Shown here piece after piece: positions 2,439-48,104 of a DNA stretch of 64,000 nt. Position 1 is the first letter of the stretch, and the number at the start of each line of letters is the position of its first letter. The translations under genes and the position numbers were made by a program. The stretch spans positions 632,896,001-632,960,000 of the forward strand of contig NC_067400.1 of NCBI RefSeq assembly GCF_016432865.1. The letters are read 5' to 3'. A model generated the notes under the pieces. The model ran no database searches. It saw nothing but the letters and a program-made list of their open reading frames with translations, and was not told the DNA's origin. This DNA is from Antechinus flavipes. Its lineage: Eukaryota.

Positions 2439-2953
2439 GCCCGCTCCCCCTGGTCCTCGCGGGCCTCGGGGAGTGGGGGTCGTTTCTGGGCCCGGGGCTC
2501 TGGGGGTGGCTGGGAACTACCGAGAGGAGGCGGTGGAGGGTTTGCTCCTCTCACGTTCAGAAGTTCGGCCCCCTCCCGTCACTTGGCACTTTGCCCAAAT
2601 GCTACCATGTTGCTATAGGGACGGGGGCGGGGCCCCAGATTCTGTGATATCACGGGAGTCGTTGCGCACGCGCAGAAAACGGGGTCGAGAACGCGAGGAG
2701 GCCGGAAAGCCTGGACTCGGGTACTCCCGAATGGGAATCATTGCGCATGCGTACCACGAAGAACCGGGTGAAGGTAGTAGGGAAGGATCGGCTTCAGGCA
2801 CAAGAGTGATGTGACGTTACGGAGAGGGAGGAGCTAGAGGGAGGGGGGCCTCGGGGTCCAAACGCAGGTGCTAGAGTGGCGCAGGCGCAGAGGTTTCGTC
2901 CGCCCTCTCCCAGAGTGCCCCGCGCGTGGTCACGTGAACGCTGGCGAGCGGCG
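2439..2953. promoter_or_regulatory. Bidirectional CpG-island promoter between GARIN5A and EMC10
   Basis: 515 bp between divergent ATGs and CpG-rich. NRF1-type TGCGCACGCGCA (2663-2674) and TGCGCATGCGTA (2742-2753), CRE-like TGACGTTA (2812-2819), E-box GTCACGTGA (2929-2937). Confidence 0.8.
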
Positions 2954-32967: not shown

Positions 32968-34875
32968 AGAAAGGAGCTCCATCCCTGCCGGGAACCGGGC
33001 CCGTGGCCCATGAACCTCCCCCTCCCACCAGCCCTCGCCCCGGGACTCAAGACACTGAGACACAGACAGAGACAGAGAAAGGAGCTCCATCCCTGCCGGG
33101 AACCGGGCCCGTGGCCCATGAACCTCCCCCTCCCACCAGCCCTCGCCCCGGGACTCAAGACACTGAGACACAGACAGAGACAGAGAAAGGAGCTCCATCC
33201 CTGCCGGGAACCGGGCCCGTGGCCCATGAACCTCCCCCTCCCACCAGCCCTCGCCCCGGGACTCAAGACACTGAGACACAGACAGAGACAGAGAAAGGAG
33301 CTCCATCCCTGCCGGGAACCGGGCCCGTGGCCCATGAACCTCCCCCTCCCACCAGCCCTCGCCCCGGGACTCAAGACACTGAGACACAGACAGAGACAGA
33401 GAAAGGAGCTCCATCCCTGCCGGGAACCGGGCCCGTGGCCCATGAACCTCCCCCTCCCACCAGCCCTCGCCCCGGGACTCAAGACACTGAGACACAGACA
33501 GAGACAGAGAAAGGAGCTCCATCCCTGCCGGGAACCGGGCCCGTGGCCCATGAACCTCCCCCTCCCACCAGCCCTCGCCCCGGGACTCAAGACACTGAGA
33601 CACAGACAGAGACAGAGGCAAAGGAGAGAAGAGGTGGGGGGAGAGTCTGACAGAGGAGGGCAAGAGAAGAGAGAGAGGTGAGATAGAGAGAGGGAGAGAC
33701 AGAGAAAGGAGCTCCATCCCTGCCGGGAACCGGGCCCGTGGCCCATGAACCTCCCCCTCCCACCAGCCCTCGCCCCGGGACTCAAGACACTGAGACACAG
33801 ACAGAGACAGAGAAAGGAGCTCCATCCCTGCCGGGAACCGGGCCCGTGGCCCATGAACCTCCCCCTCCCACCAGCCCTCGCCCCGGGACTCANNNNNNNN
33901 NNNNNNNNNNNNNNNNNNNNNNNNNNNNNNNNNNNNNNNNNNNNNNNNNNNNNNNNNNNNNNNNNNNNNNNNNNNNNNNNNNNNNNNNNNNNNNNNNNNN
34001 NNNNNNNNNNNNNNNNNNNNNNNNNNNNNNNNNNNNNNNNNNNNNNNNNNNNNNNNNNNNNNNNNNNNNNNNNNNTGCCGGGAACCGGGCCCGTGGCCCA
34101 TGAACCTCCCCCTCCCACCAGCCCTCGCCCCGGGACTCAAGACACTGAGACACAGACAGAGACAGAGATGGAGAGAGAGATGAAGAGATAGAGAGACAGA
34201 GAAAGAAAGAGATGGAGAGAGACAGAGAGGCAAAAGAGAGAAGAAAGGGGGAGGAGAGAATCTGACAGAGGAGGGCAAGAGAAGAGAGAGAGGTGAGATA
34301 GAGAGAGGGAGAGACAGAGGGAGACAGAGGGAGAGACAGAAAGACAGAGGGAGAGACAGAGAAAGGAGCTCCATCCCTGCCGGGAACCGGGCCCGTGGCC
34401 CATGAACCTCCCCCTCCCACCAGCCCTCGCCCCGGGACTCAAGACACTGAGACACAGACAGAGACAGAGATGCACAGAAAGATAGGGAGAGACAGAGGGA
34501 GAGACAGAAAGAGGGAGATGGAGAGAGACAGAGATGGAGAGAGACAGAGAAAGGAGCTCCATCCCTGCCGGGAACCGGGCCCGTGGCCCATGAACCTCCC
34601 CCTCCCACCAGCCCTCGCCCCGGGACTCAAGACACTGAGACACAGACAGAGACAGAGAAAGGAGCTCCATCCCTGCCGGGAACCGGGCCCGTGGCCCATG
34701 AACCTCCCCCTCCCACCAGCCCTCGCCCCGGGACTCAAGACACTGAGACACAGACAGAGACAGAGAAAGGAGCTCCATCCCTGCCGGGAACCGGGCCCGT
34801 GGCCCATGAACCTCCCCCTCCCACCAGCCCTCGCCCCGGGACTCAAGACACTGAGACACAGACAGAGACAGAGAA
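32968..34875. repeat. 108-bp minisatellite, ~13 near-identical units in several runs separated by GAGACAGA-rich spacers
   Basis: GGAGCTCC starts at 32973, 33081, 33189 and onward (period 108). Unit GGAGCTCCATCCCTGCCGGGAACCGGGCCCGTGGCCCATGAACCTCCCCCTCCCACCAGCCCTCGCCCCGGGACTCAAGACACTGAGACACAGACAGAGACAGAGAAA. Confidence 0.97.
33893..34075. other. Assembly gap / masked run (183 N)
   Basis: N run inside the 108-bp array. Confidence 1.
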
Positions 34876-38114: not shown

Positions 38115-38965
38115 TCAGGCCGCCTGCAGCCAGCTGCCCCGCCCTCCACCTCTTTGGTGACCACCAGAAGCACCTCACACGGGCCCTCGGCCAGGGCGGC
38201 CGACAGGAAGTCCCTGGGGGAGAGGGGCCACGGTGGGTGGCCGGCCTTTGGCCCTGGGCTCCGCCCCCCGCGGCCCCTTGAGCCCCCGGTCCCGCCCCCG
38301 CCCCCGCGGCCCCCCGAGCCCCCGGCCCCGCCCCTTTGCGGCTCCCCGGGCTCCTGCCAATGAGGGGCTCCTCCACCTCCGCCCTTATCTCGGGCCCAGA
38401 CCCCTCGGCTCCGCAGAAGCTAAATCGGGCTCCTCAGCTGTCATCAGTCCCCCTCATCCCCCCCCCCGCACTCCCGGGGCTCAGCCCCTCCTCGGCTCGC
38501 TGGGCCCTCGCCCCCCCCCCCCGCTCCGCCCCCCCCCCCCGCCCCCCGCCGGGCCCTCACCTGAGCTCGGCCTCGCCGCCCAGGGCCACGGGCTCCCGAA
38601 GCTTCGAGTCCAAGTTGTAGTAGACGTTGCCCACCTGGCGCAAGGCCACCCAGTGGCGCCGCTGCAGGGGCAGGGACAGCACGCCCAGGGAGACGGGGGA
38701 GGGCAGGTTCAGGATGAAGCCCAGGACCTGGGGCAGGGCCAGCTGGGCCAAGGGCCTGGGGAAGAGCGCAGGGAGCGGGCTCAGCCGGGCCTCCCCCTCC
38801 CCTCCCGCAGCCCCCGCCCCTCCCCCAGACGAGCTCTCACCGCCGCCGTCCCACCACACGGCCGCCAGCCCCAGGCCCTGAAGAGCAGCCATGATGACGT
38901 TCACATCGTAATTCCCCGTGCCCAGGAGGCTTCGATGAGGGTTCAGGCGGGAATCGGGGGCCAAC
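38115..38965 (-). pseudogene. JOSD2: Partial tandem duplicate of JOSD2 (last three coding exons: 38965-38841, 38755-38561, 38213-38115), lacking the first coding exon, with two 1-nt deletions
   Basis: Block 36948-39360 is near-identical to 39970-42381. Exon B' is 125 versus 126 nt (GACGGCGGCG vs GACCGGCGGCG) and exon D' is 99 versus 100 nt (CCCCGCCC vs CCCGCGCCC). No copy of the exon with the start codon and catalytic Cys. Could be an assembly false duplication. Confidence 0.7.
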
Positions 38966-39360
38966 CTGCAAGGGGCGGCAGGGAGGGCTCTCAGGGAGGT
39001 CTGCTGGGGCTGGGGGCCCCCCTGTCTCCATCCAGTTCCGGGCTGAAGCAGGCCCTGCCCTTCCCCTGCCCGCTTCCCTCTGGCTCCCAGACCCGGGAGC
39101 ACCCAGAAGGGATGAGGAGAAAGGGGGAGAAAGGGACCGGGAAGGCTCCTTGTGAGCCCCTCCCCTCTTTTCCGTTTGTCTTCTGCCCAGAGAAAGGACC
39201 TCGAACACCATAGGGGCAGAATGAATGTTTTTGTCACTGGACCATGGAGCCCCGCCCACACGAGGTTCCTCCTCAGGTCCCGGGCAGCCCTTTGGGGACC
39301 TTCTCTCCTCTGCCCTCCCCACCCTAGTGCAAAGCTCATCACCTCCCGCTGGGTCACCAG

Positions 39361-40600: not shown

Positions 40601-41138
40601 GCGCTTGTCAGAGAAACAGTGCGGCCGGGCGTGTGATCAGTACCATGATGGCTGCCGGGGAAGGCTGTCGAGGCGCTGATATCGCGGAGCTCTCACCAGC
40701 CCTGGGAAGTGGGGGCCACACTTATCCCCATTTTACAGATGAGGAAAGTCAGTCTCCAGAGGGGAAATATAACTGGTGGGGGCGGGGCCCCAGGAAGTCC
40801 AGCACTGCGCCCCCCCAGGTCTGACCCCCCCAGCACGTGGCCCTTGGCACCCAGCTCGGCCGCCGGATCAGTGGAACCTGAATAGGGAAGGGAGAAGTGG
40901 GGGAGCCGCCGGGCGGGGCCGGCACGGAGGGGAGGGAGGGCAGATAAGGCTGAGGAGGGCCCCCCCCCCGGGGGCGCCTTCAGCCTCTGCCCCTCTCCGG
41001 GCGCTGAGGGCTGGGCAGAGACGGACGCCGGCGCGGGGAGGCCAGAGGCCGGGGAAGGCACACTCACGGCGGCCGAGGCCAGCAGCAGTGACAGGGAGAG
41101 GTAGGCGCCCGGCGGGCCGGGCCGTGGGGGCGGGGCGC

Positions 41139-43765
41139 TCAGGCCGCCTGCAGCCAGCTGCCCGCGCCCTCCACCTCTTTGGTGACCACCAGAAGCACCT
41201 CACACGGGCCCTCGGCCAGGGCGGCCGACAGGAAGTCCCTGGGGGAGAGGGGCCACGGTGGGTGGCCGGCCTTTGGCCCTGGGCTCCGCCCCCCGCGCCC
41301 CCTGAGCCCCCGGCCCCGCCCCCGCCCCCCGCGGCCCCCTGAGCCCCCGGCCCCGCCCCCGCCCCCCGCGGCCCCCCGCGCCCCCGGCCCCGCCCCTTTG
41401 CGGCTCCCCGGGCTCCTGCCAATGAGGGGCTGCCTCCACCTCCGCCCTTATCTCGGGCCCAGACCCCTCGGCTCCGCAGAAGCTAAATCGGGCTCCTCAG
41501 CTGTCATCAGTCCCCCTCATCCCCCCCCCCCGCACTCCCGGGGCTCAGCCCCTCCTCGGCTCGCTGGGCCCTCGCCCCCCCCCCTCCGCCCCCCGCCGGG
41601 CCCTCACCTGAGCTCGGCCTCGCCGCCCAGGGCCACGGGCTCCCGAAGCTTCGAGTCCAAGTTGTAGTAGACGTTGCCCACCTGGCGCAAGGCCACCCAG
41701 TGGCGCCGCTGCAGGGGCAGGGACAGCACGCCCAGGGAGACGGGGGAGGGCAGGTTCAGGATGAAGCCCAGGACCTGGGGCAGGGCCAGCTGGGCCAAGG
41801 GCCTGGGGAAGAGCGCAGGGAGCGGGCTCAGCCGGGCCTCCCCCTCCCCTCCCGCAGCCCCCGCCCCTCCCCCAGACGAGCTCTCACCGCCGCCGGTCCC
41901 ACCACACGGCCGCCAGCCCCAGGCCCTGAAGAGCAGCCATGATGACGTTCACATCGTAATTCCCCGTGCCCAGGAGGCTTCGATGAGGGTTCAGGCGGGA
42001 ATCGGGGGCCAACCTGCAGGGGGCGGCAGGGAGGGCTCTCAGGGAGGTCTGCTGGGGCTGGGGGCCCCCCTGTCTCCATCCAGTTCCGGGCTGAAGCAGG
42101 CCCTGCCCTTCCCCTGCCCGCTTCCCTCTGGCTCCCAGACCCGGGAGCACCCAGAAGGGATGAGGAGAAAGGGGGAGAAAGGGACCGGGAAGGCTCCTTG
42201 TGAGCCCCTCCCCTAAGGACCTCGAACACCATAGGGGCATAATGAATGTTTTTGTCAATGGACCATGGAGCCCCGCCCACACGAGGTTCCTCCTCAGGTC
42301 CCGGGCAGCCCTTTGGGGACCTTCTCTCCTCTGCCCTCCCCACCCTAGTGCAAAGCTCATCACCTCCCGCTGGGTCACCAGCTGCAAAGGCTGCTGGGGG
42401 AGCTCCGGCCAGGCCATCAGCCCCCAAAGGGATGACCCCTTCCTCAACAACCCCTGCGGCTCCCTATGGCCTCCAGAATCAAGTACAAAACCCTCTACTC
42501 GGCATTCAGAGCCCTGCTTGGTCTGACTGCTTCCCAGCTTTCCAGTCTCTTGCCTCCCTCTCCACCTCCCTCCCCACGGAGAGCTCTTGGGAGCAGTAAT
42601 TCTGGCTGTTCTAGATCCCGGTGGGAACTGGCCCCCAGCCCTGAGAGGCTCCCCCCCCCAGCCTTCCTCAGCCCCCTCCCCATTAATTCCTGTTTATCCT
42701 GACCTGAACGTGTTTGTAGTTGTCTCAGGCTGGAGTGAGAGCTCCCTACCCACAGCGCCGGCCCTTTTGCCTCTCTCTAGCCTAGCGCTCCCCGGGCCGG
42801 CTTCCCAGCACCCCAGGGCCGGCCTCGGCCAAGCCTCCTAGTGCTCCCCAGGCCGGCCTCCTAGTGCTCCCTGGGCCGGCCTCTCCCCACCCCCCCAGCC
42901 TCAGCCAAGCCTCCTAGTGCTCTCCAGGCTGGCCTCCTAGTGCTCCCCAGGCTGGCCTCCCAGCACCCTGGGGCCGGCCTCAGCCAAGCCTCCTAGTGCT
43001 CCCCGGGCCAGCCTCCTAGTGCTCCCCAGGCTGGCCTCCTAGTGCTCCCCAGGCTGGCCTCCTAGTGCTCCCCAGGCTGGCCTCCCAGCACCCCGGGGCC
43101 GGCCTCAGCCAAGCCTCCTAGTGCTCCCTAGGCTGGCCTCCTAGTGCTCCCCAGAGCCAGCCTCTCCCCCCCCCCCCCAGCCTCGGCCAAGCCTCCTGGC
43201 CCATCCTGGGCTCTGCCCTCCCTCCTTCCTTCCTTCATTGGCAGGTCCCTGCCACAGTCCCTTGGAAGCAAGTTCCTCCTGCTGGGCCTGGCATTCAAGA
43301 CCAGCCCCTCTCACAGCCTCCTGCCCTTCCCTTGGTGACTCCAGCTGCCCCTCCCCCTCTCTGAGCCTCAGTTTCCCCACTTGAACAATGAGAAGGCTGG
43401 ACGGCTGCAGGCCCCACGCCCCCCCCCCCCCCCCCCCAGCCCGGCTGGGCCACCTCCCCGCCCCAGAAGGGACGGCTTGTTCAGAATCCCAAATGGGGAG
43501 CAGGCGGGAAGGGGCGCACACCCGGGGCTGGCCCCCTCCTCCTTCCCACCCGGCAGTCTGCCCGCGCGCCCGTGGGAGTGGGCGGGGGGCTGTGGGGGCG
43601 TCACCTCTTGCAGATCTCATCGGCCGCTTCCTGGCTGAAGAGGCGCTGCTGCAGGACGTTGTTGAGCGCGTGCACGGCGCAGAGCTCCAGGCGCTGCCGC
43701 TCGTGGTACACGGGCACGGGGGGCTCCGCGCCCCGCTCCTCGGGGGGCCCCGGGCTCCCCGACAT
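41139..43765 (-). CDS. JOSD2: Josephin domain-containing deubiquitinase 2, 193 aa; exons 43765-43605, 42013-41888, 41802-41608, 41238-41139
   Basis: [36 protein letters not shown]|[42 protein letters not shown]|[42 protein letters not shown]..|[32 protein letters not shown]. Cys/His/Asp triad intact; all introns phase 2, GT-AG; 582 nt. Confidence 0.97.
42780..43150. repeat. ~23-bp minisatellite with variant units in a JOSD2 intron
   Basis: Unit CCTCCTAGTGCTCCCCAGGCTGG interspersed with CCTCAGCCAAG and CCCAGCACCC variants. Confidence 0.9.
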
Positions 43766-44129
43766 CCAGGGTCCTGCGCACACCGGGAGAGAGGCACGGG
43801 CGCACTGAGCCTCCAGGGGGAGGGCGAGGCAGAGACGCGGAGCGGGGGAGCAGAGGGAGGGGCGCGGAGACTCGGGCCGAGGCCCAGGAGGCTGGGGCTG
43901 CAGGAGGTGCAGACTGGGACGGGGAGACCCGAGGCGGGAGGCGGAGGCTCAGGGGGCGGGGGCGGGGGCGCAGAGACAGAGGGACGGGGGGGCGCCGGGG
44001 AGGTCAGAGACAGGGAGAGACCGAGTTGGGAAGGGGCAAAGACGGGGCTGGGGGGGGCAGACAGAGACAGGGAGGCAACCGCACCGACCGAGGAGCTGAG
44101 TCAAGCGCGGGGACGCGGACCGATGCTTA

Positions 44130-44680
44130 GAGATCCCGCCCCGCCCCGCCCCGCCCCAAGCCGCCAAAGGGGAAACTGAGGCTCAGGCAGAGCCTGAACC
44201 CCCGGCCGGGGCCCCTCCCTCCTCTCGAGTCGCTTGGCAACAAGTCCCGCCCCCGCCCCCCTCCGGACCCTGTGGGACTCGCCTTCCCAGAGGTCCCCGC
44301 GCCAAGACTGATCTTCCCAGAAATCCTCACGGCTTCTTTCGGAACGCTTTCCCAGAAGCCCCTGCTGTCTCTTGCGGGACACTTTCCCAGAAGCCCCTTG
44401 GCCTGCAGTGGGACTCGTCTTCCCAGAACCTCCCGCGGTGGGCCCGCAAAACCAGGTAGTCAGGCGGAGGCGTGCATGGGACGCCTGGCCTTCCCAGAAG
44501 CCCCCGCGACTAACGCCGGACTCAACTTCCCAGGAGGCCACGCGGCCTGCTCGGGTCCACACTTCCTAGAAGCGTCCTCAAAAGGCCTAAAATGACCTTC
44601 CCAGAATCCCTCGGGAACTTGAAGCCCGTAGTGGGGAAACCGAGGCACAGAGTCGAAACAAGCACGTAGTGGGGAAAGAA
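44130..44680 (-). promoter_or_regulatory. JOSD2 promoter region: GC boxes, X-box-like site and phased TTCCCAGAA array
   Basis: (CCCCG)n Sp1 boxes at ~44137-44158 and ~44246-44258; GTCGCTTGGCAAC at 44229-44241; nine TTCC(C/T)AG cores at 44284-44606; CpG-rich and upstream of the first coding exon. Confidence 0.7.
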
Positions 44681-44999
44681 GGGCAATATGAAGAAATTGA
44701 GCCACGGAGCGGGGGAGAATGAGTGAGATAACTGAGGCAGAGAGTGGCCCAACGGGCGGAACGTGGGGTCCGGTGGAGCAGAGCTTTGAATGCCACATCT
44801 CCCCTCTCCCCAAATGTTGAGGCTTATAGAGCTCAGAGTGTTTCAGATAAACGGCAGACTTGTGCTAGTGACCCCCAAGGCCTCGGGGTCAGTCAGGGTC
44901 GCCAGGTGACTCTGGAGCCCCCCATCCCCGCAGTGCCAAACAGTGGGGAGCGCACCCGGGGCTGGCAGGGGGCGTGGGGGGGAGGCCAAGGAGCCGGCC

Positions 45000-45420
45000 T
45001 GGGGGCTGGGAGGGGGGCGGGGCAGGATCGGGCCCGGGCTGGGGGCTGGGGGCGGGAAGGATCGGGCCCGGACTGGGGGCTGGGGGCGGGGCAGGATCGG
45101 GCCCGGGCTGGGGGCTGGGGGCGGGGCAGGATCGGGCCCGGGCTGGGGGCCGGGGGAGGGGCCAGGATCGGACCCGGGCTGGGGGAGGGGCGAGGAGCGG
45201 GGAAGGATCGGGCCCGGGCTGTGAGCTGGGGGAGGGGCCAGGATCGGGCCCGGCTGGGGGCTGGGGGAGGGGCGAGGAGCGGGGAAGGATCGGGCCCGGA
45301 CTGGGGGCTGGGGGAGGGGCCAGGATCGGACCCGGACTGGGGGCTGGGGGAGGGGCCAGGATCGGACCCGGACTGGGGGCTGGGGGAGGGGCGAGGAGCG
45401 GGGAAGGATCGGACCGGGAC
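45000..45420. repeat. G-rich ~30-36-bp minisatellite between ASPDH 3' end and JOSD2 promoter
   Basis: Units GGGGGCTGGGGGMGGGGCCAGGATCGGRCCCGG with GGCGAGGAGCGGGGA variants. Confidence 0.92.
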
Positions 45421-45595
45421 TGGGGGCTTGCAGCGAAGGTTCCGGTGACCCGAGCCTTACCCACAGAGCTTGGGGCTCCCTTCTGGCCCCCTCAGGGGGG
45501 TGTCCTCGGTCCCCCCACCCCTTTTGCTCCCCGCCCAAGTCCCAGAGGCCAGTACTGAGGCAAGCAGAGATTTCCATTGGAGCCAAGACCCCCAC

Positions 45596-45601
45596 TTTAT
45601 T
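45596..45601 (-). terminator. ASPDH polyadenylation signal AATAAA
   Basis: TTTATT on plus, 37 nt past the stop. Confidence 0.8.
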
Positions 45602-45638
45602 GACAGGGAGGCTGGCGCGTGGCGGGCAGCCCCGGTCC

Positions 45639-48104
<2,466 letters not shown>

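What the first reader, a model, noticed from the sequence alone, without database searches (positions are those of the whole stretch)
44284..44606. Phased array of nine TTCCCAGAA-type cores with divergent spacers in the JOSD2 promoter
Seen: cores start at 44284 (TTCCCAGAG), 44314, 44349, 44384, 44420, 44491, 44527 (TTCCCAGGA), 44563 (TTCCTAGAA) and 44598, all on one strand. Spacings are 30, 35, 35, 36, 71 (one slot skipped), 36, 36 and 35 bp, while the intervening ~26 bp differ in each unit. Extended consensus is roughly GGAC(T)N2-5TTCCCAGAAGCC. Known: TTCN3GAA is the STAT GAS element (TTCCTAGAA also binds STAT5/BCL6), and ACTACAAnTCCCAGnAnGC is the ZNF143/THAP11 motif found clustered in housekeeping promoters; inverted ACTAC words occur at ~44456, 44627 and 44666. 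Inference: an ancient tandem repeat in which selection kept only the binding cores and their spacing, making a periodic factor-loading platform.
Basis: partly seen in the sequence, partly recalled or inferred. Interest (0 to 1): 0.75.

Follow-up and report, generated by a model that had tools for sequence, protein, structure and literature searches.

The report
Ancient ZNF143-type site array at JOSD2
At the 5' end of the marsupial JOSD2 gene, nine to ten copies of one short DNA word survive from a tandem repeat older than the living marsupial orders; the DNA between them has drifted like neutral sequence, but the words, which match the ZNF143 transcription-factor motif, have been kept by selection.

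Summary
Nine same-strand TTCCCAGAA-type cores lie at the stated coordinates. Six are exact, and the 64 kb window has only one other exact copy.

The window is marsupial and JOSD2 is on the minus strand. The array lies 0.52-0.84 kb upstream of its start codon.

The array is present unit for unit in bilby, monito del monte and opossum, and a wallaby gene model translates it.
- Across four marsupials, 72% of core columns are invariant.
- Spacers are 46% invariant, about the same as four-fold degenerate sites (47%).
- So selection has kept the cores. Spacing is only partly kept.

Five units match the 13-nt ZNF143 consensus TTCCCAGVAKSCY exactly (0.32 expected by chance). No unit keeps the THAP11 module ACTAYR.

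At the same promoter position, fox, sloth and squirrel carry two forward M4/SBS2-type units and platypus carries one. Hoatzin has a separate array of 11 near-canonical ZNF143 sites.

Best reading: a tandem expansion of a ZNF143/M4-type promoter element into a cluster of same-type binding sites. A STAT (GAS) reading is not excluded, because 7 of 9 cores fit it.

The scan has noted other tandem factor-site arrays in this genome, but not this one.

The parts
44274..44615 (+). The whole array: nine units plus one decayed slot, period about 35-36 bp. Motifs read on the + strand, antisense to JOSD2.
   Evidence: orthologous in three marsupial loci
44284..44292 (+). Unit 1 core TTCCCAGAG, invariant in 4 marsupials and not a GAS site. 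On the minus strand it abuts the exon-1 end of the wallaby model.
44314..44322 (+). Unit 2 core TTCCCAGAA. Dromiciops has GTCCCAGAA; Monodelphis has an ETS-like CCGGAAGT.
44349..44361 (+). Unit 3, exact match to the ZNF143 consensus TTCCCAGVAKSCY
44384..44396 (+). Unit 4, exact match to the ZNF143 consensus; core invariant in 4 species
44420..44428 (+). Unit 5 core TTCCCAGAA (TTCCCATGA in Dromiciops)
44450..44458 (+). Decayed tenth slot (aaCCAGgtA); it explains the 71-bp gap and is decayed in all four marsupials
   Evidence: inference
44491..44503 (+). Unit 6, exact match to the ZNF143 consensus
44527..44539 (+). Unit 7 TTCCCAGGAGGCC, exact match to the ZNF143 consensus. It is not a GAS site, and the core is the same in 3 of 4 species.
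44563..44571 (+). Unit 8 TTCCTAGAA (TTCCCGGAA in Monodelphis, TTTCCGGAA in Dromiciops, deleted in Macrotis)
44598..44610 (+). Unit 9 TTCCCAGAATCCC, exact match to the ZNF143 consensus
44229..44241 (+). X-box-like word GTCGCTTGGCAAC, conserved in marsupials. Eutherians have GTTGCCTGGCAAC at the matching place, which anchors promoter orthology.
44246..44260 (+). GC box (CCCGCC repeats) between the X-box-like word and unit 1; a second GC box lies at 44135-44157
44281..44283 (-). Junction implied by the wallaby model: exon 1 would end at 44283, followed by a GC-type donor (aag|gcgagt on the minus strand)
   Evidence: inference from another species' predicted protein
43604..43774 (-). First coding exon of JOSD2: acceptor cag|GACCCTGG, ATG at 43765-43763, CDS down to 43604

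Best explanation
The array is a tandem expansion, to nine or ten units of about 35 bp, of an M4/SBS2-type promoter element (GGACT-N4-TTCCCAG-N3-nCCCnGCG). That element sits at the 5' end of JOSD2 in all the amniotes examined. The expansion predates the split of opossums from Australasian marsupials. Since then the spacers have changed at about the rate of synonymous sites. The 9-nt cores, and to a lesser degree +14..+16, have been held by purifying selection. The kept part equals the 5' half of the ZNF143 (Staf) binding site, while the THAP11/HCF-1 module ACTAYR has decayed in every unit. Inferred mechanism, not shown: the units act as a cluster of moderate-affinity ZNF143-type sites in the CpG island around the JOSD2 transcription start. 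Several could be occupied at once, since an 18-bp footprint fits a 35-bp period. Together they would sustain or buffer JOSD2 transcription, or take part in start-site choice, as non-canonical ZNF143 sites do at the ZNF143 gene itself.
For: The cluster is non-random. Orthology is unit by unit in Macrotis, Dromiciops and Monodelphis. Window 44052-44635 aligns at 78-81% identity, like the coding exons, while most intron and intergenic DNA does not align. Invariant columns are 58/81 in cores against 121/261 in spacers (p 7e-5). Without CpG columns the figures are 56/74 against 77/170. With cores defined in Monodelphis they are 49/54 against 140/261. Four-fold sites are 40/86 invariant; cores against four-fold sites gives p 0.0016, spacers against four-fold sites p 1.0. 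Conservation peaks at +1..+8 and again at +14..+16. The published consensus strings are Znf143 ATTTCCCAGVAKSCY and GFY-Staf RACTACAATTCCCAGAAKGC. TTCCCAGVAKSCY has 5 exact hits in the window, all in the array, against 0.32 expected, and 4, 4 and 1 in the arrays of the other marsupials. Outgroup units align without gaps in the same register. Two forward M4-type units stand at the same promoter position in each of fox, sloth and squirrel, and one in platypus. Hoatzin has 11 sites fitting YYCCCRnnRTGCnYYGCG in the same orientation. SBS1/SBS2/TBS definitions and ZNF143 binding come from PMC3627581.
Against: There are no binding, chromatin or transcription-start data for any marsupial. The central ATGCA of the 18-bp SBS1 is not present; the consensus has AGCCC at +8..+12. 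Positions +9..+12 are no better conserved than the spacer average. Only 1 of 9 Monodelphis units fits the 13-mer exactly, while 6 fit GAS. JOSD2 was not found together with ZNF143 in the searchable papers or in the four supplement files held as text. Conservation of a CpG-free 9-mer could in part reflect the aligner anchoring on repeated words.
Confidence: 0.55

Rival explanations
1. The array is a row of STAT-binding GAS elements (TTCN3GAA) that makes JOSD2 cytokine- or interferon-responsive in marsupials.
For: TTCCCAGAA is the Fc-gamma-receptor GAS used as a STAT1 probe (PMC9279507). An exact GAS is present in 7 of 9 window units and in 5, 4 and 6 units of the other marsupials. Monodelphis units 6 and 8 are the palindromic TTCCCGGAA.
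Against: Unit 1 (TTCCCAGAG) is invariant in all four marsupials and unit 7 (TTCCCAGGA) is the same in three of four, yet neither is a GAS. Dromiciops changes (GTCCCAGAA, TTCCCATGA) break GAS but keep TCCCA. Homologous outgroup units (TCCCAGCGG, TTCCGGCGG, TCCCGGCGTGC) are not GAS but M4/SBS-type. A second conserved patch at +14..+16 lies outside a GAS.
Confidence: 0.12
2. Another factor that reads TTCCCA/TGGGAA occupies the cores, or ETS factors on the CCGGAAG variants do. Candidates are the Ikaros family with NF-kB p50, or RBPJ. ZNF143 would be incidental.
For: The downstream M4 module TCCCRRNR binds Ikaros and tethers NFKB1 (PMC5006282). RBPJ binds the TTCCCA inside SBS sites (PMC3627581). 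CCC and +8 are the best-kept positions. Monodelphis and the eutherians carry CCGGAAG(T) variants.
Against: The full 9-mer, including G6, A7 and A8, is conserved, which is more than TGGGAA needs. The RBPJ consensus quoted is TTCCCAA, not TTCCCAG. Ikaros factors are lymphoid-restricted (PMC5006282 calls them lymphocyte-specific), and I take JOSD2 to be broadly expressed (own knowledge).
Confidence: 0.13
3. The repeated word works in RNA. The array is transcribed as part of the JOSD2 first exon and the minus-strand word UUCUGGGAA acts in the 5' untranslated region.
For: Residues 26-81 of wallaby isoform X4 are an ungapped 71% match to the minus-strand translation of 44281-44448, joined to the ATG exon at 43774. 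So at least one gene model runs through units 1-6.
Against: This is a predicted model from another species, and I could read no RNA here. The reading frame is not kept: the period is not a multiple of 3, there are 10-12 bp indels, and there is no ATG start in the window ORF. The homologous outgroup units are recognised DNA motifs. There was no Rfam match.
Confidence: 0.08
4. The array is a neutral relic: an old minisatellite in a slowly evolving CpG island with no selected role for the cores.
For: The spacers evolve like four-fold sites. Unit loss and indels are tolerated. Other unconserved minisatellites lie next door at 45013-45402.
Against: Cores are significantly more conserved than spacers and than four-fold sites, after CpG, gap and ascertainment controls. 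Nine of nine units are still recognisable in both Dromiciops and Monodelphis, the latter across the deepest marsupial split.
Confidence: 0.07

Closest known systems
M4 / SBS2 composite promoter motif (ACTAYRNNNCCCR; ACTACAnTTCCCAnnATGCAYYGCG) bound by THAP11-HCF-1 and ZNF143 (PMC5006282, PMC3627581)
   Same: TTCCCAG core. ACT at -7..-5 and YGCG at +14..+17 are in the same register. It lies at the 5' end of a gene in a GC-rich stretch. Bona fide M4 matches stand at the same JOSD2 position in eutherians and platypus.
   Different: The ACTAYR module has decayed in all nine units, with no M4 match. The central ATGCA is missing. There are nine to ten tandem copies instead of one or two.
Non-canonical ZNF143 sites around the start site of the ZNF143 gene (PMC3936768)
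   Same: Several low-score SBS in a conserved non-coding stretch at or just downstream of a transcription start, which is possibly the situation here if the wallaby model is right.
   Different: That case has three sites, not a tandem repeat, and its start-site switch was shown by experiment. Nothing has been tested here.
[quoted passage not shown]
   Same: An identical 9-mer in six units.
   Different: Units 1 and 7 do not fit GAS, although unit 1 is invariant in four marsupials and unit 7 is the same in three. The ancestry of the units is M4/SBS-type.
Hoatzin JOSD2 upstream array (L009:3422-3953; 102 bp x 5.2 copies, 95% alike)
   Same: A tandem array of ZNF143-type sites, antisense to JOSD2, directly upstream of the coding start. 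Its first unit carries ACTACG.
   Different: Sites alternate at 54 and 48 bp, the copies are young or homogenised, and the 18-mers are near-canonical with TGC and YYGCG. It is probably an independent expansion.
Other tandem factor-site arrays noted by this scan in the same genome (five CTCF sites between ASPN and OMD; nine NF-Y boxes at MAJIN)
   Same: A binding word multiplied by a minisatellite at a regulatory position.
   Different: Different factors and origins. I did not examine those notes.

Membership tests
ZNF143/Staf binding site (SBS1) | 5' part of the motif as in the published consensus TTCCCAGVAKSCY | tested here: met
   5 of 9 units match exactly and 4 have two mismatches. There is no other exact match in 64 kb, against 0.32 expected. 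The consensus string is taken from PMC6585704.
ZNF143/Staf binding site (SBS1) | Full 18-bp form TTCCCAnnATGCAYYGCG | tested here: not met
   No unit fits YYCCCRnnRTGCnYYGCG. The array consensus has AGCCC in place of ATGCA, but YGCG is in register.
ZNF143/Staf binding site (SBS1) | Bound by ZNF143 in vitro or in cells | not testable with these tools
   No ChIP or EMSA data. JOSD2 was not found with ZNF143 in the searchable papers or supplements.
M4 / THAP11 binding site | ACTAYRNNNCCCR | tested here: not met
   0 matches in the window and in the three marsupial loci; 1-3 in each eutherian and platypus locus. ACTAYR with at most one mismatch occurs in 0-1 units per species.
GAS element (STAT) | TTCN3GAA palindromic half-sites | tested here: inconclusive
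   7 of 9 units fit in the window and 4-6 in the other marsupials. Units 1 and 7 do not fit, although unit 1 is invariant in four species and unit 7 is the same in three.
Tandem repeat (minisatellite) origin | Head-to-tail units of one period with residual similarity outside the core | tested here: met
   Spacings are 30-36 bp. Flank identity between units is 0.41 against 0.28 from composition. TRF itself does not call the array. Eutherians have a 31-bp two-unit version.
Selected regulatory element | Cores more conserved between species than spacers and than a neutral proxy | tested here: met
   Invariant columns are 72% in cores, 46% in spacers and 47% at four-fold sites.
Phased platform | Spacing conserved between species | tested here: inconclusive
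   Most slots are kept within 0-3 bp, but one slot is 35/35/23/25, one is 36/35/36/47, and one unit is lost in Macrotis.

The most novel reading that the evidence does not exclude
The 5' end of JOSD2 is a place where a ZNF143-type site is repeatedly multiplied into a tandem array and then held by selection, in separate amniote lineages: about 35-bp units in marsupials, 48/54-bp units in hoatzin, and a 31-bp pair in eutherians. That would imply this gene needs many ZNF143-type sites, for example for dose sensing or start-site choice, with ZNF143 taking over from THAP11/HCF-1 in marsupials.
Probability: 0.3. Interest if true: 0.65.

Novelty: new variant of a known kind. Interest (0 to 1): 0.5.

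Why it matters
This is a clean natural experiment on how a cluster of same-type factor sites evolves. One tandem repeat has been followed unit by unit across the deepest marsupial split. The 9-nt words are kept while the spacers run at about the synonymous rate, and one half of a bipartite motif (ACTAYR) is lost from all copies. It gives a directly testable case for three questions. Does copy number of ZNF143-type sites matter? Does spacing matter? Can ZNF143-type sites work without the THAP11 module? The second, unrelated array at the same gene in a bird suggests the expansion is not an accident. It is a single locus, no binding has been shown, and the element type is well known, so the interest is moderate.

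Tried and rejected
There are no start-site, expression or population data.
2. Tandem Repeats Finder does not detect the array.
3. There is no Rfam family at 42000-47000.
4. blastn does not align the array to fox or platypus. Homology to outgroups rests on position, motif and register.
5. Paper searches: ZNF143 with JOSD2 gave 0 papers. The bare 9-mer returned mostly unrelated papers. 'ZNF143' with 'tandem repeats' gave nothing relevant. Josd2 is absent from the four supplement files held as text for PMC11687419, and no supplements are held for PMC3627581. These blanks say little.
6. Four isoform proteins (horse, wallaby, antechinus, sugar glider) were not on record, so those loci could not be fetched.
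7. A protein-coding reading of the array (minus-strand ORF 44101-44562; the wallaby N-terminal extension) was rejected. The period is not a multiple of three, the indels shift the frame, and the window ORF lacks an ATG.
8. The idea that the inverted ACTAC words are M4 sites was rejected on word order. Their MIR-like nature is only weakly supported.
9. The search of earlier findings by sequence was blank.
The homologue search used an ORF by reference, with the scored region limited to one exon, and conservation at codon positions was computed exon by exon.
11. None of the loci fetched is from human or any other primate. The N runs were left alone.

Full report
**Observation.** Spacings are 30, 35, 35, 36, 71, 36, 36 and 35 bp. 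The exact 9-mer occurs seven times in the 64 kb on both strands, six of them inside these 323 bp. Shuffles give 2.18 for the whole window, so the cluster is far beyond chance. Tandem Repeats Finder does not report it. The 27 flanking positions of the units are still 41% alike, against 28% expected from composition, as expected for a decayed tandem repeat. The 71-bp gap holds a decayed core-like word near 44450-44458, which makes a tenth slot.

**Setting.** The window is marsupial. JOSD2 lies on the minus strand.
- Its first coding exon is 43604-43774, with the ATG at 43765.
- The last ASPDH exon is at about 46406-46762, also on the minus strand.
- The array therefore lies 0.52-0.84 kb upstream of the JOSD2 start codon, between JOSD2 and the 3' end of ASPDH, and its motifs read antisense to JOSD2.
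- Between the array and the gene lie a GC box (44246-44260) and an X-box-like word (44229-44241). Both are conserved.

**Comparative data.** No vertebrate genome search was on hand, so I found JOSD2 proteins with a one-exon query and fetched the DNA around the genes. None of the loci is from human or any other primate.

The array is present and collinear in bilby (L004), monito del monte (L003) and opossum (L005). Window 44052-44635 aligns to all three at 78-81% identity, like the coding exons, whereas most intron and intergenic DNA does not align. The predicted wallaby isoform X4 has an N-terminal extension whose residues 26-81 match the minus-strand translation of 44281-44448 without gaps (71% identity). 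So the wallaby has units 1-5 with spacing of the same total length. The array therefore predates the split of Didelphimorphia from the Australasian orders, which published time trees put at roughly 70-90 million years (my own knowledge).

**Selection.** Invariant columns across the four aligned marsupials:

| Class | Invariant | Share |
|---|---|---|
| Cores | 58/81 | 72% |
| Spacers | 121/261 | 46% |
| Cores, CpG columns removed | 56/74 | 76% |
| Spacers, CpG columns removed | 77/170 | 45% |
| Cores, gap columns removed | 58/71 | 82% |
| Spacers, gap columns removed | 121/209 | 58% |
| Cores defined in Monodelphis, scored in the other three | 49/54 | 91% |
| Spacers, scored in the same three | 140/261 | 54% |
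| JOSD2 four-fold degenerate sites | 40/86 | 47% |
| JOSD2 codon positions 1 / 2 / 3 | 156, 169, 115 of 184 | 85% / 92% / 62% |

- Cores against spacers gives Fisher p = 7e-5, and the difference holds under each control.
- Cores differ from four-fold sites (p = 0.0016); spacers do not (p = 1.0).
- Per-position conservation peaks at +1..+8 (0.78-0.94) and again at +14..+16 (0.78-0.85).
Selection has kept the cores, and the spacers look close to neutral.
- Spacing is kept only in part. Window, bilby, Dromiciops and opossum give 35/35/23/25 for slot 3-4 and 36/35/36/47 for slot 6-7, and the bilby has lost unit 8.
- A period of 35-36 bp is about 3.4 helical turns, so neighbouring sites do not share a face of the helix (arithmetic).

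**What the word is.** The unit consensus is GGGACTcgCC-TTCCCAGAA-GCCCCyGCG. Published consensus strings are ATTTCCCAGVAKSCY for ZNF143 and RACTACAATTCCCAGAAKGC for GFY-Staf. SBS1, SBS2 and the THAP11 site are defined in PMC3627581, and the bipartite M4 motif ACTAYRNNNCCCR in PMC5006282.
- TTCCCAGVAKSCY has five exact matches in the window, all of them units of the array (44349, 44384, 44491, 44527, 44598), against 0.32 expected.
- The other marsupial arrays hold 4, 4 and 1 exact matches.
- The ACT at -7..-5 and the YGCG at +14..+17 stand in the SBS2 register. The ACTAYR module itself is gone: no M4 match in the window or in the three marsupial loci.
- The central ATGCA of the 18-mer is also absent.

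**Ancestry.** At the same promoter position the outgroups carry forward M4-type units in the same orientation.
- Fox, sloth and squirrel each have two forward units; in squirrel and fox they stand about 31 bp apart (squirrel: ACTACAGCTCCCAGCG... and ACTACGATTTCCGGCGG...).
- Platypus has one forward unit.
- All four (fox, sloth, squirrel, platypus) also have an inverted ACTACnnnTCCCA-type site farther upstream.
- Seven window units and eight outgroup units align essentially without gaps (one 1-nt gap, in fox unit 1), with GGACT, T(T/C)CCC(A/G)G and CCCnGCG in register.
- The hoatzin has its own array: 102 bp x 5.2 copies, 95% alike. It carries 11 sites that fit YYCCCRnnRTGCnYYGCG at alternating 54 and 48 bp, in the same orientation, just upstream of the coding start. 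Its first unit has ACTACG.

So JOSD2 has a ZNF143/M4-type 5' end across amniotes. The marsupial array is an expansion of that element, and a second expansion with a different unit length exists in a bird.

**Mechanism (inferred).** Nine to ten moderate, non-canonical ZNF143-type sites in the CpG island would act as a cluster of same-type sites. A 35-bp period leaves room for an 18-bp footprint on every unit. The wallaby model suggests that at least some transcripts start upstream of unit 6 and run through the array, with exon 1 ending right after unit 1 (44283) and joining 43774. In the window the donor would be of the GC type. If so, the sites lie around or downstream of a start site. The ZNF143 gene shows such an arrangement, where non-canonical sites steer start-site choice (PMC3936768). 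None of this is shown for JOSD2.

**Rivals.**
- STAT/GAS is the main one. TTCCCAGAA is the Fc-gamma-receptor GAS, and 4-7 units per species fit TTCN3GAA. However, units 1 and 7 are not GAS although unit 1 is invariant in all four species and unit 7 is the same in three; several lineage changes break GAS while keeping TCCCA; and the ancestral units are not GAS.
- Readers of TGGGAA (Ikaros with p50, RBPJ), or ETS factors on the CCGGAAG variants, remain possible.
- An RNA-level role and pure neutrality are less likely, for the reasons given in their entries.

**Limits.**
- Only four marsupial sequences were aligned. Column counts treat sites as independent, and the aligner may favour repeated words.

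Noticed in passing
L001:5480-5850, L007:5330-5700, L008:4400-4830 (eutherian JOSD2 loci): Fox, sloth and squirrel have a separate periodic array of CCTAGCAACAG / GTTACCTAGCAAC words between the M4-type units and the ATG exon. The words resemble the RFX X-box (compare the consensus TGTTKCCTAGCAACM listed for Rfx6 in PMC6585704). Marsupials have only one such word, at window 44229-44241.
   Followed up: partly
protein P0045 (wallaby josephin-2-like isoform X4, XP_072463114.1), residues 1-83: The N-terminal extension of this predicted isoform is a translation of the array (repeated ASGK, LLGK, FWEG, LWEG). It is probably an annotation artefact of a 5' exon, not real protein.
   Followed up: partly
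window 45013-45402: A G-rich minisatellite of 36-bp period (10.6 copies, 81% matches) lies 400 bp beyond the array. It has the same period as the array but unrelated sequence, and it does not align to the other marsupials.
   Followed up: partly
window 45887-46516: ORF translations on both strands show a short periodic peptide repeat (for example [13 protein letters not shown]). This points to another tandem repeat just downstream of the ASPDH last exon.
   Followed up: no
window 33022-34830: The word CTCCCACCAGCCC recurs at steps of mostly 108 bp (13 hits) next to the N run at 33893-34075. This is a 108-bp tandem repeat.
   Followed up: no
window 2907-2924 (+): A lone 18-mer, CTCCCAGAGTGCCCCGCG, fits the fuller ZNF143 pattern YYCCCRnnRTGCnYYGCG. 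It is the only such match in the window.
   Followed up: no
window 44629-44660, 44668-44680, 44163-44195: Words such as GGGGAAACCGAGGCACAGAG recall the core of MIR-type SINEs (my own knowledge). Only short matches to the SINE copies in the platypus locus were found. The first is conserved in Dromiciops and Monodelphis.
   Followed up: partly
window about 38200-39100 and 41100-42100 (-): JOSD2 exons B, C and D each hit two places about 3 kb apart in tblastn, which agrees with the partial tandem duplication noted earlier. The array and the first coding exon are single-copy.
   Followed up: partly
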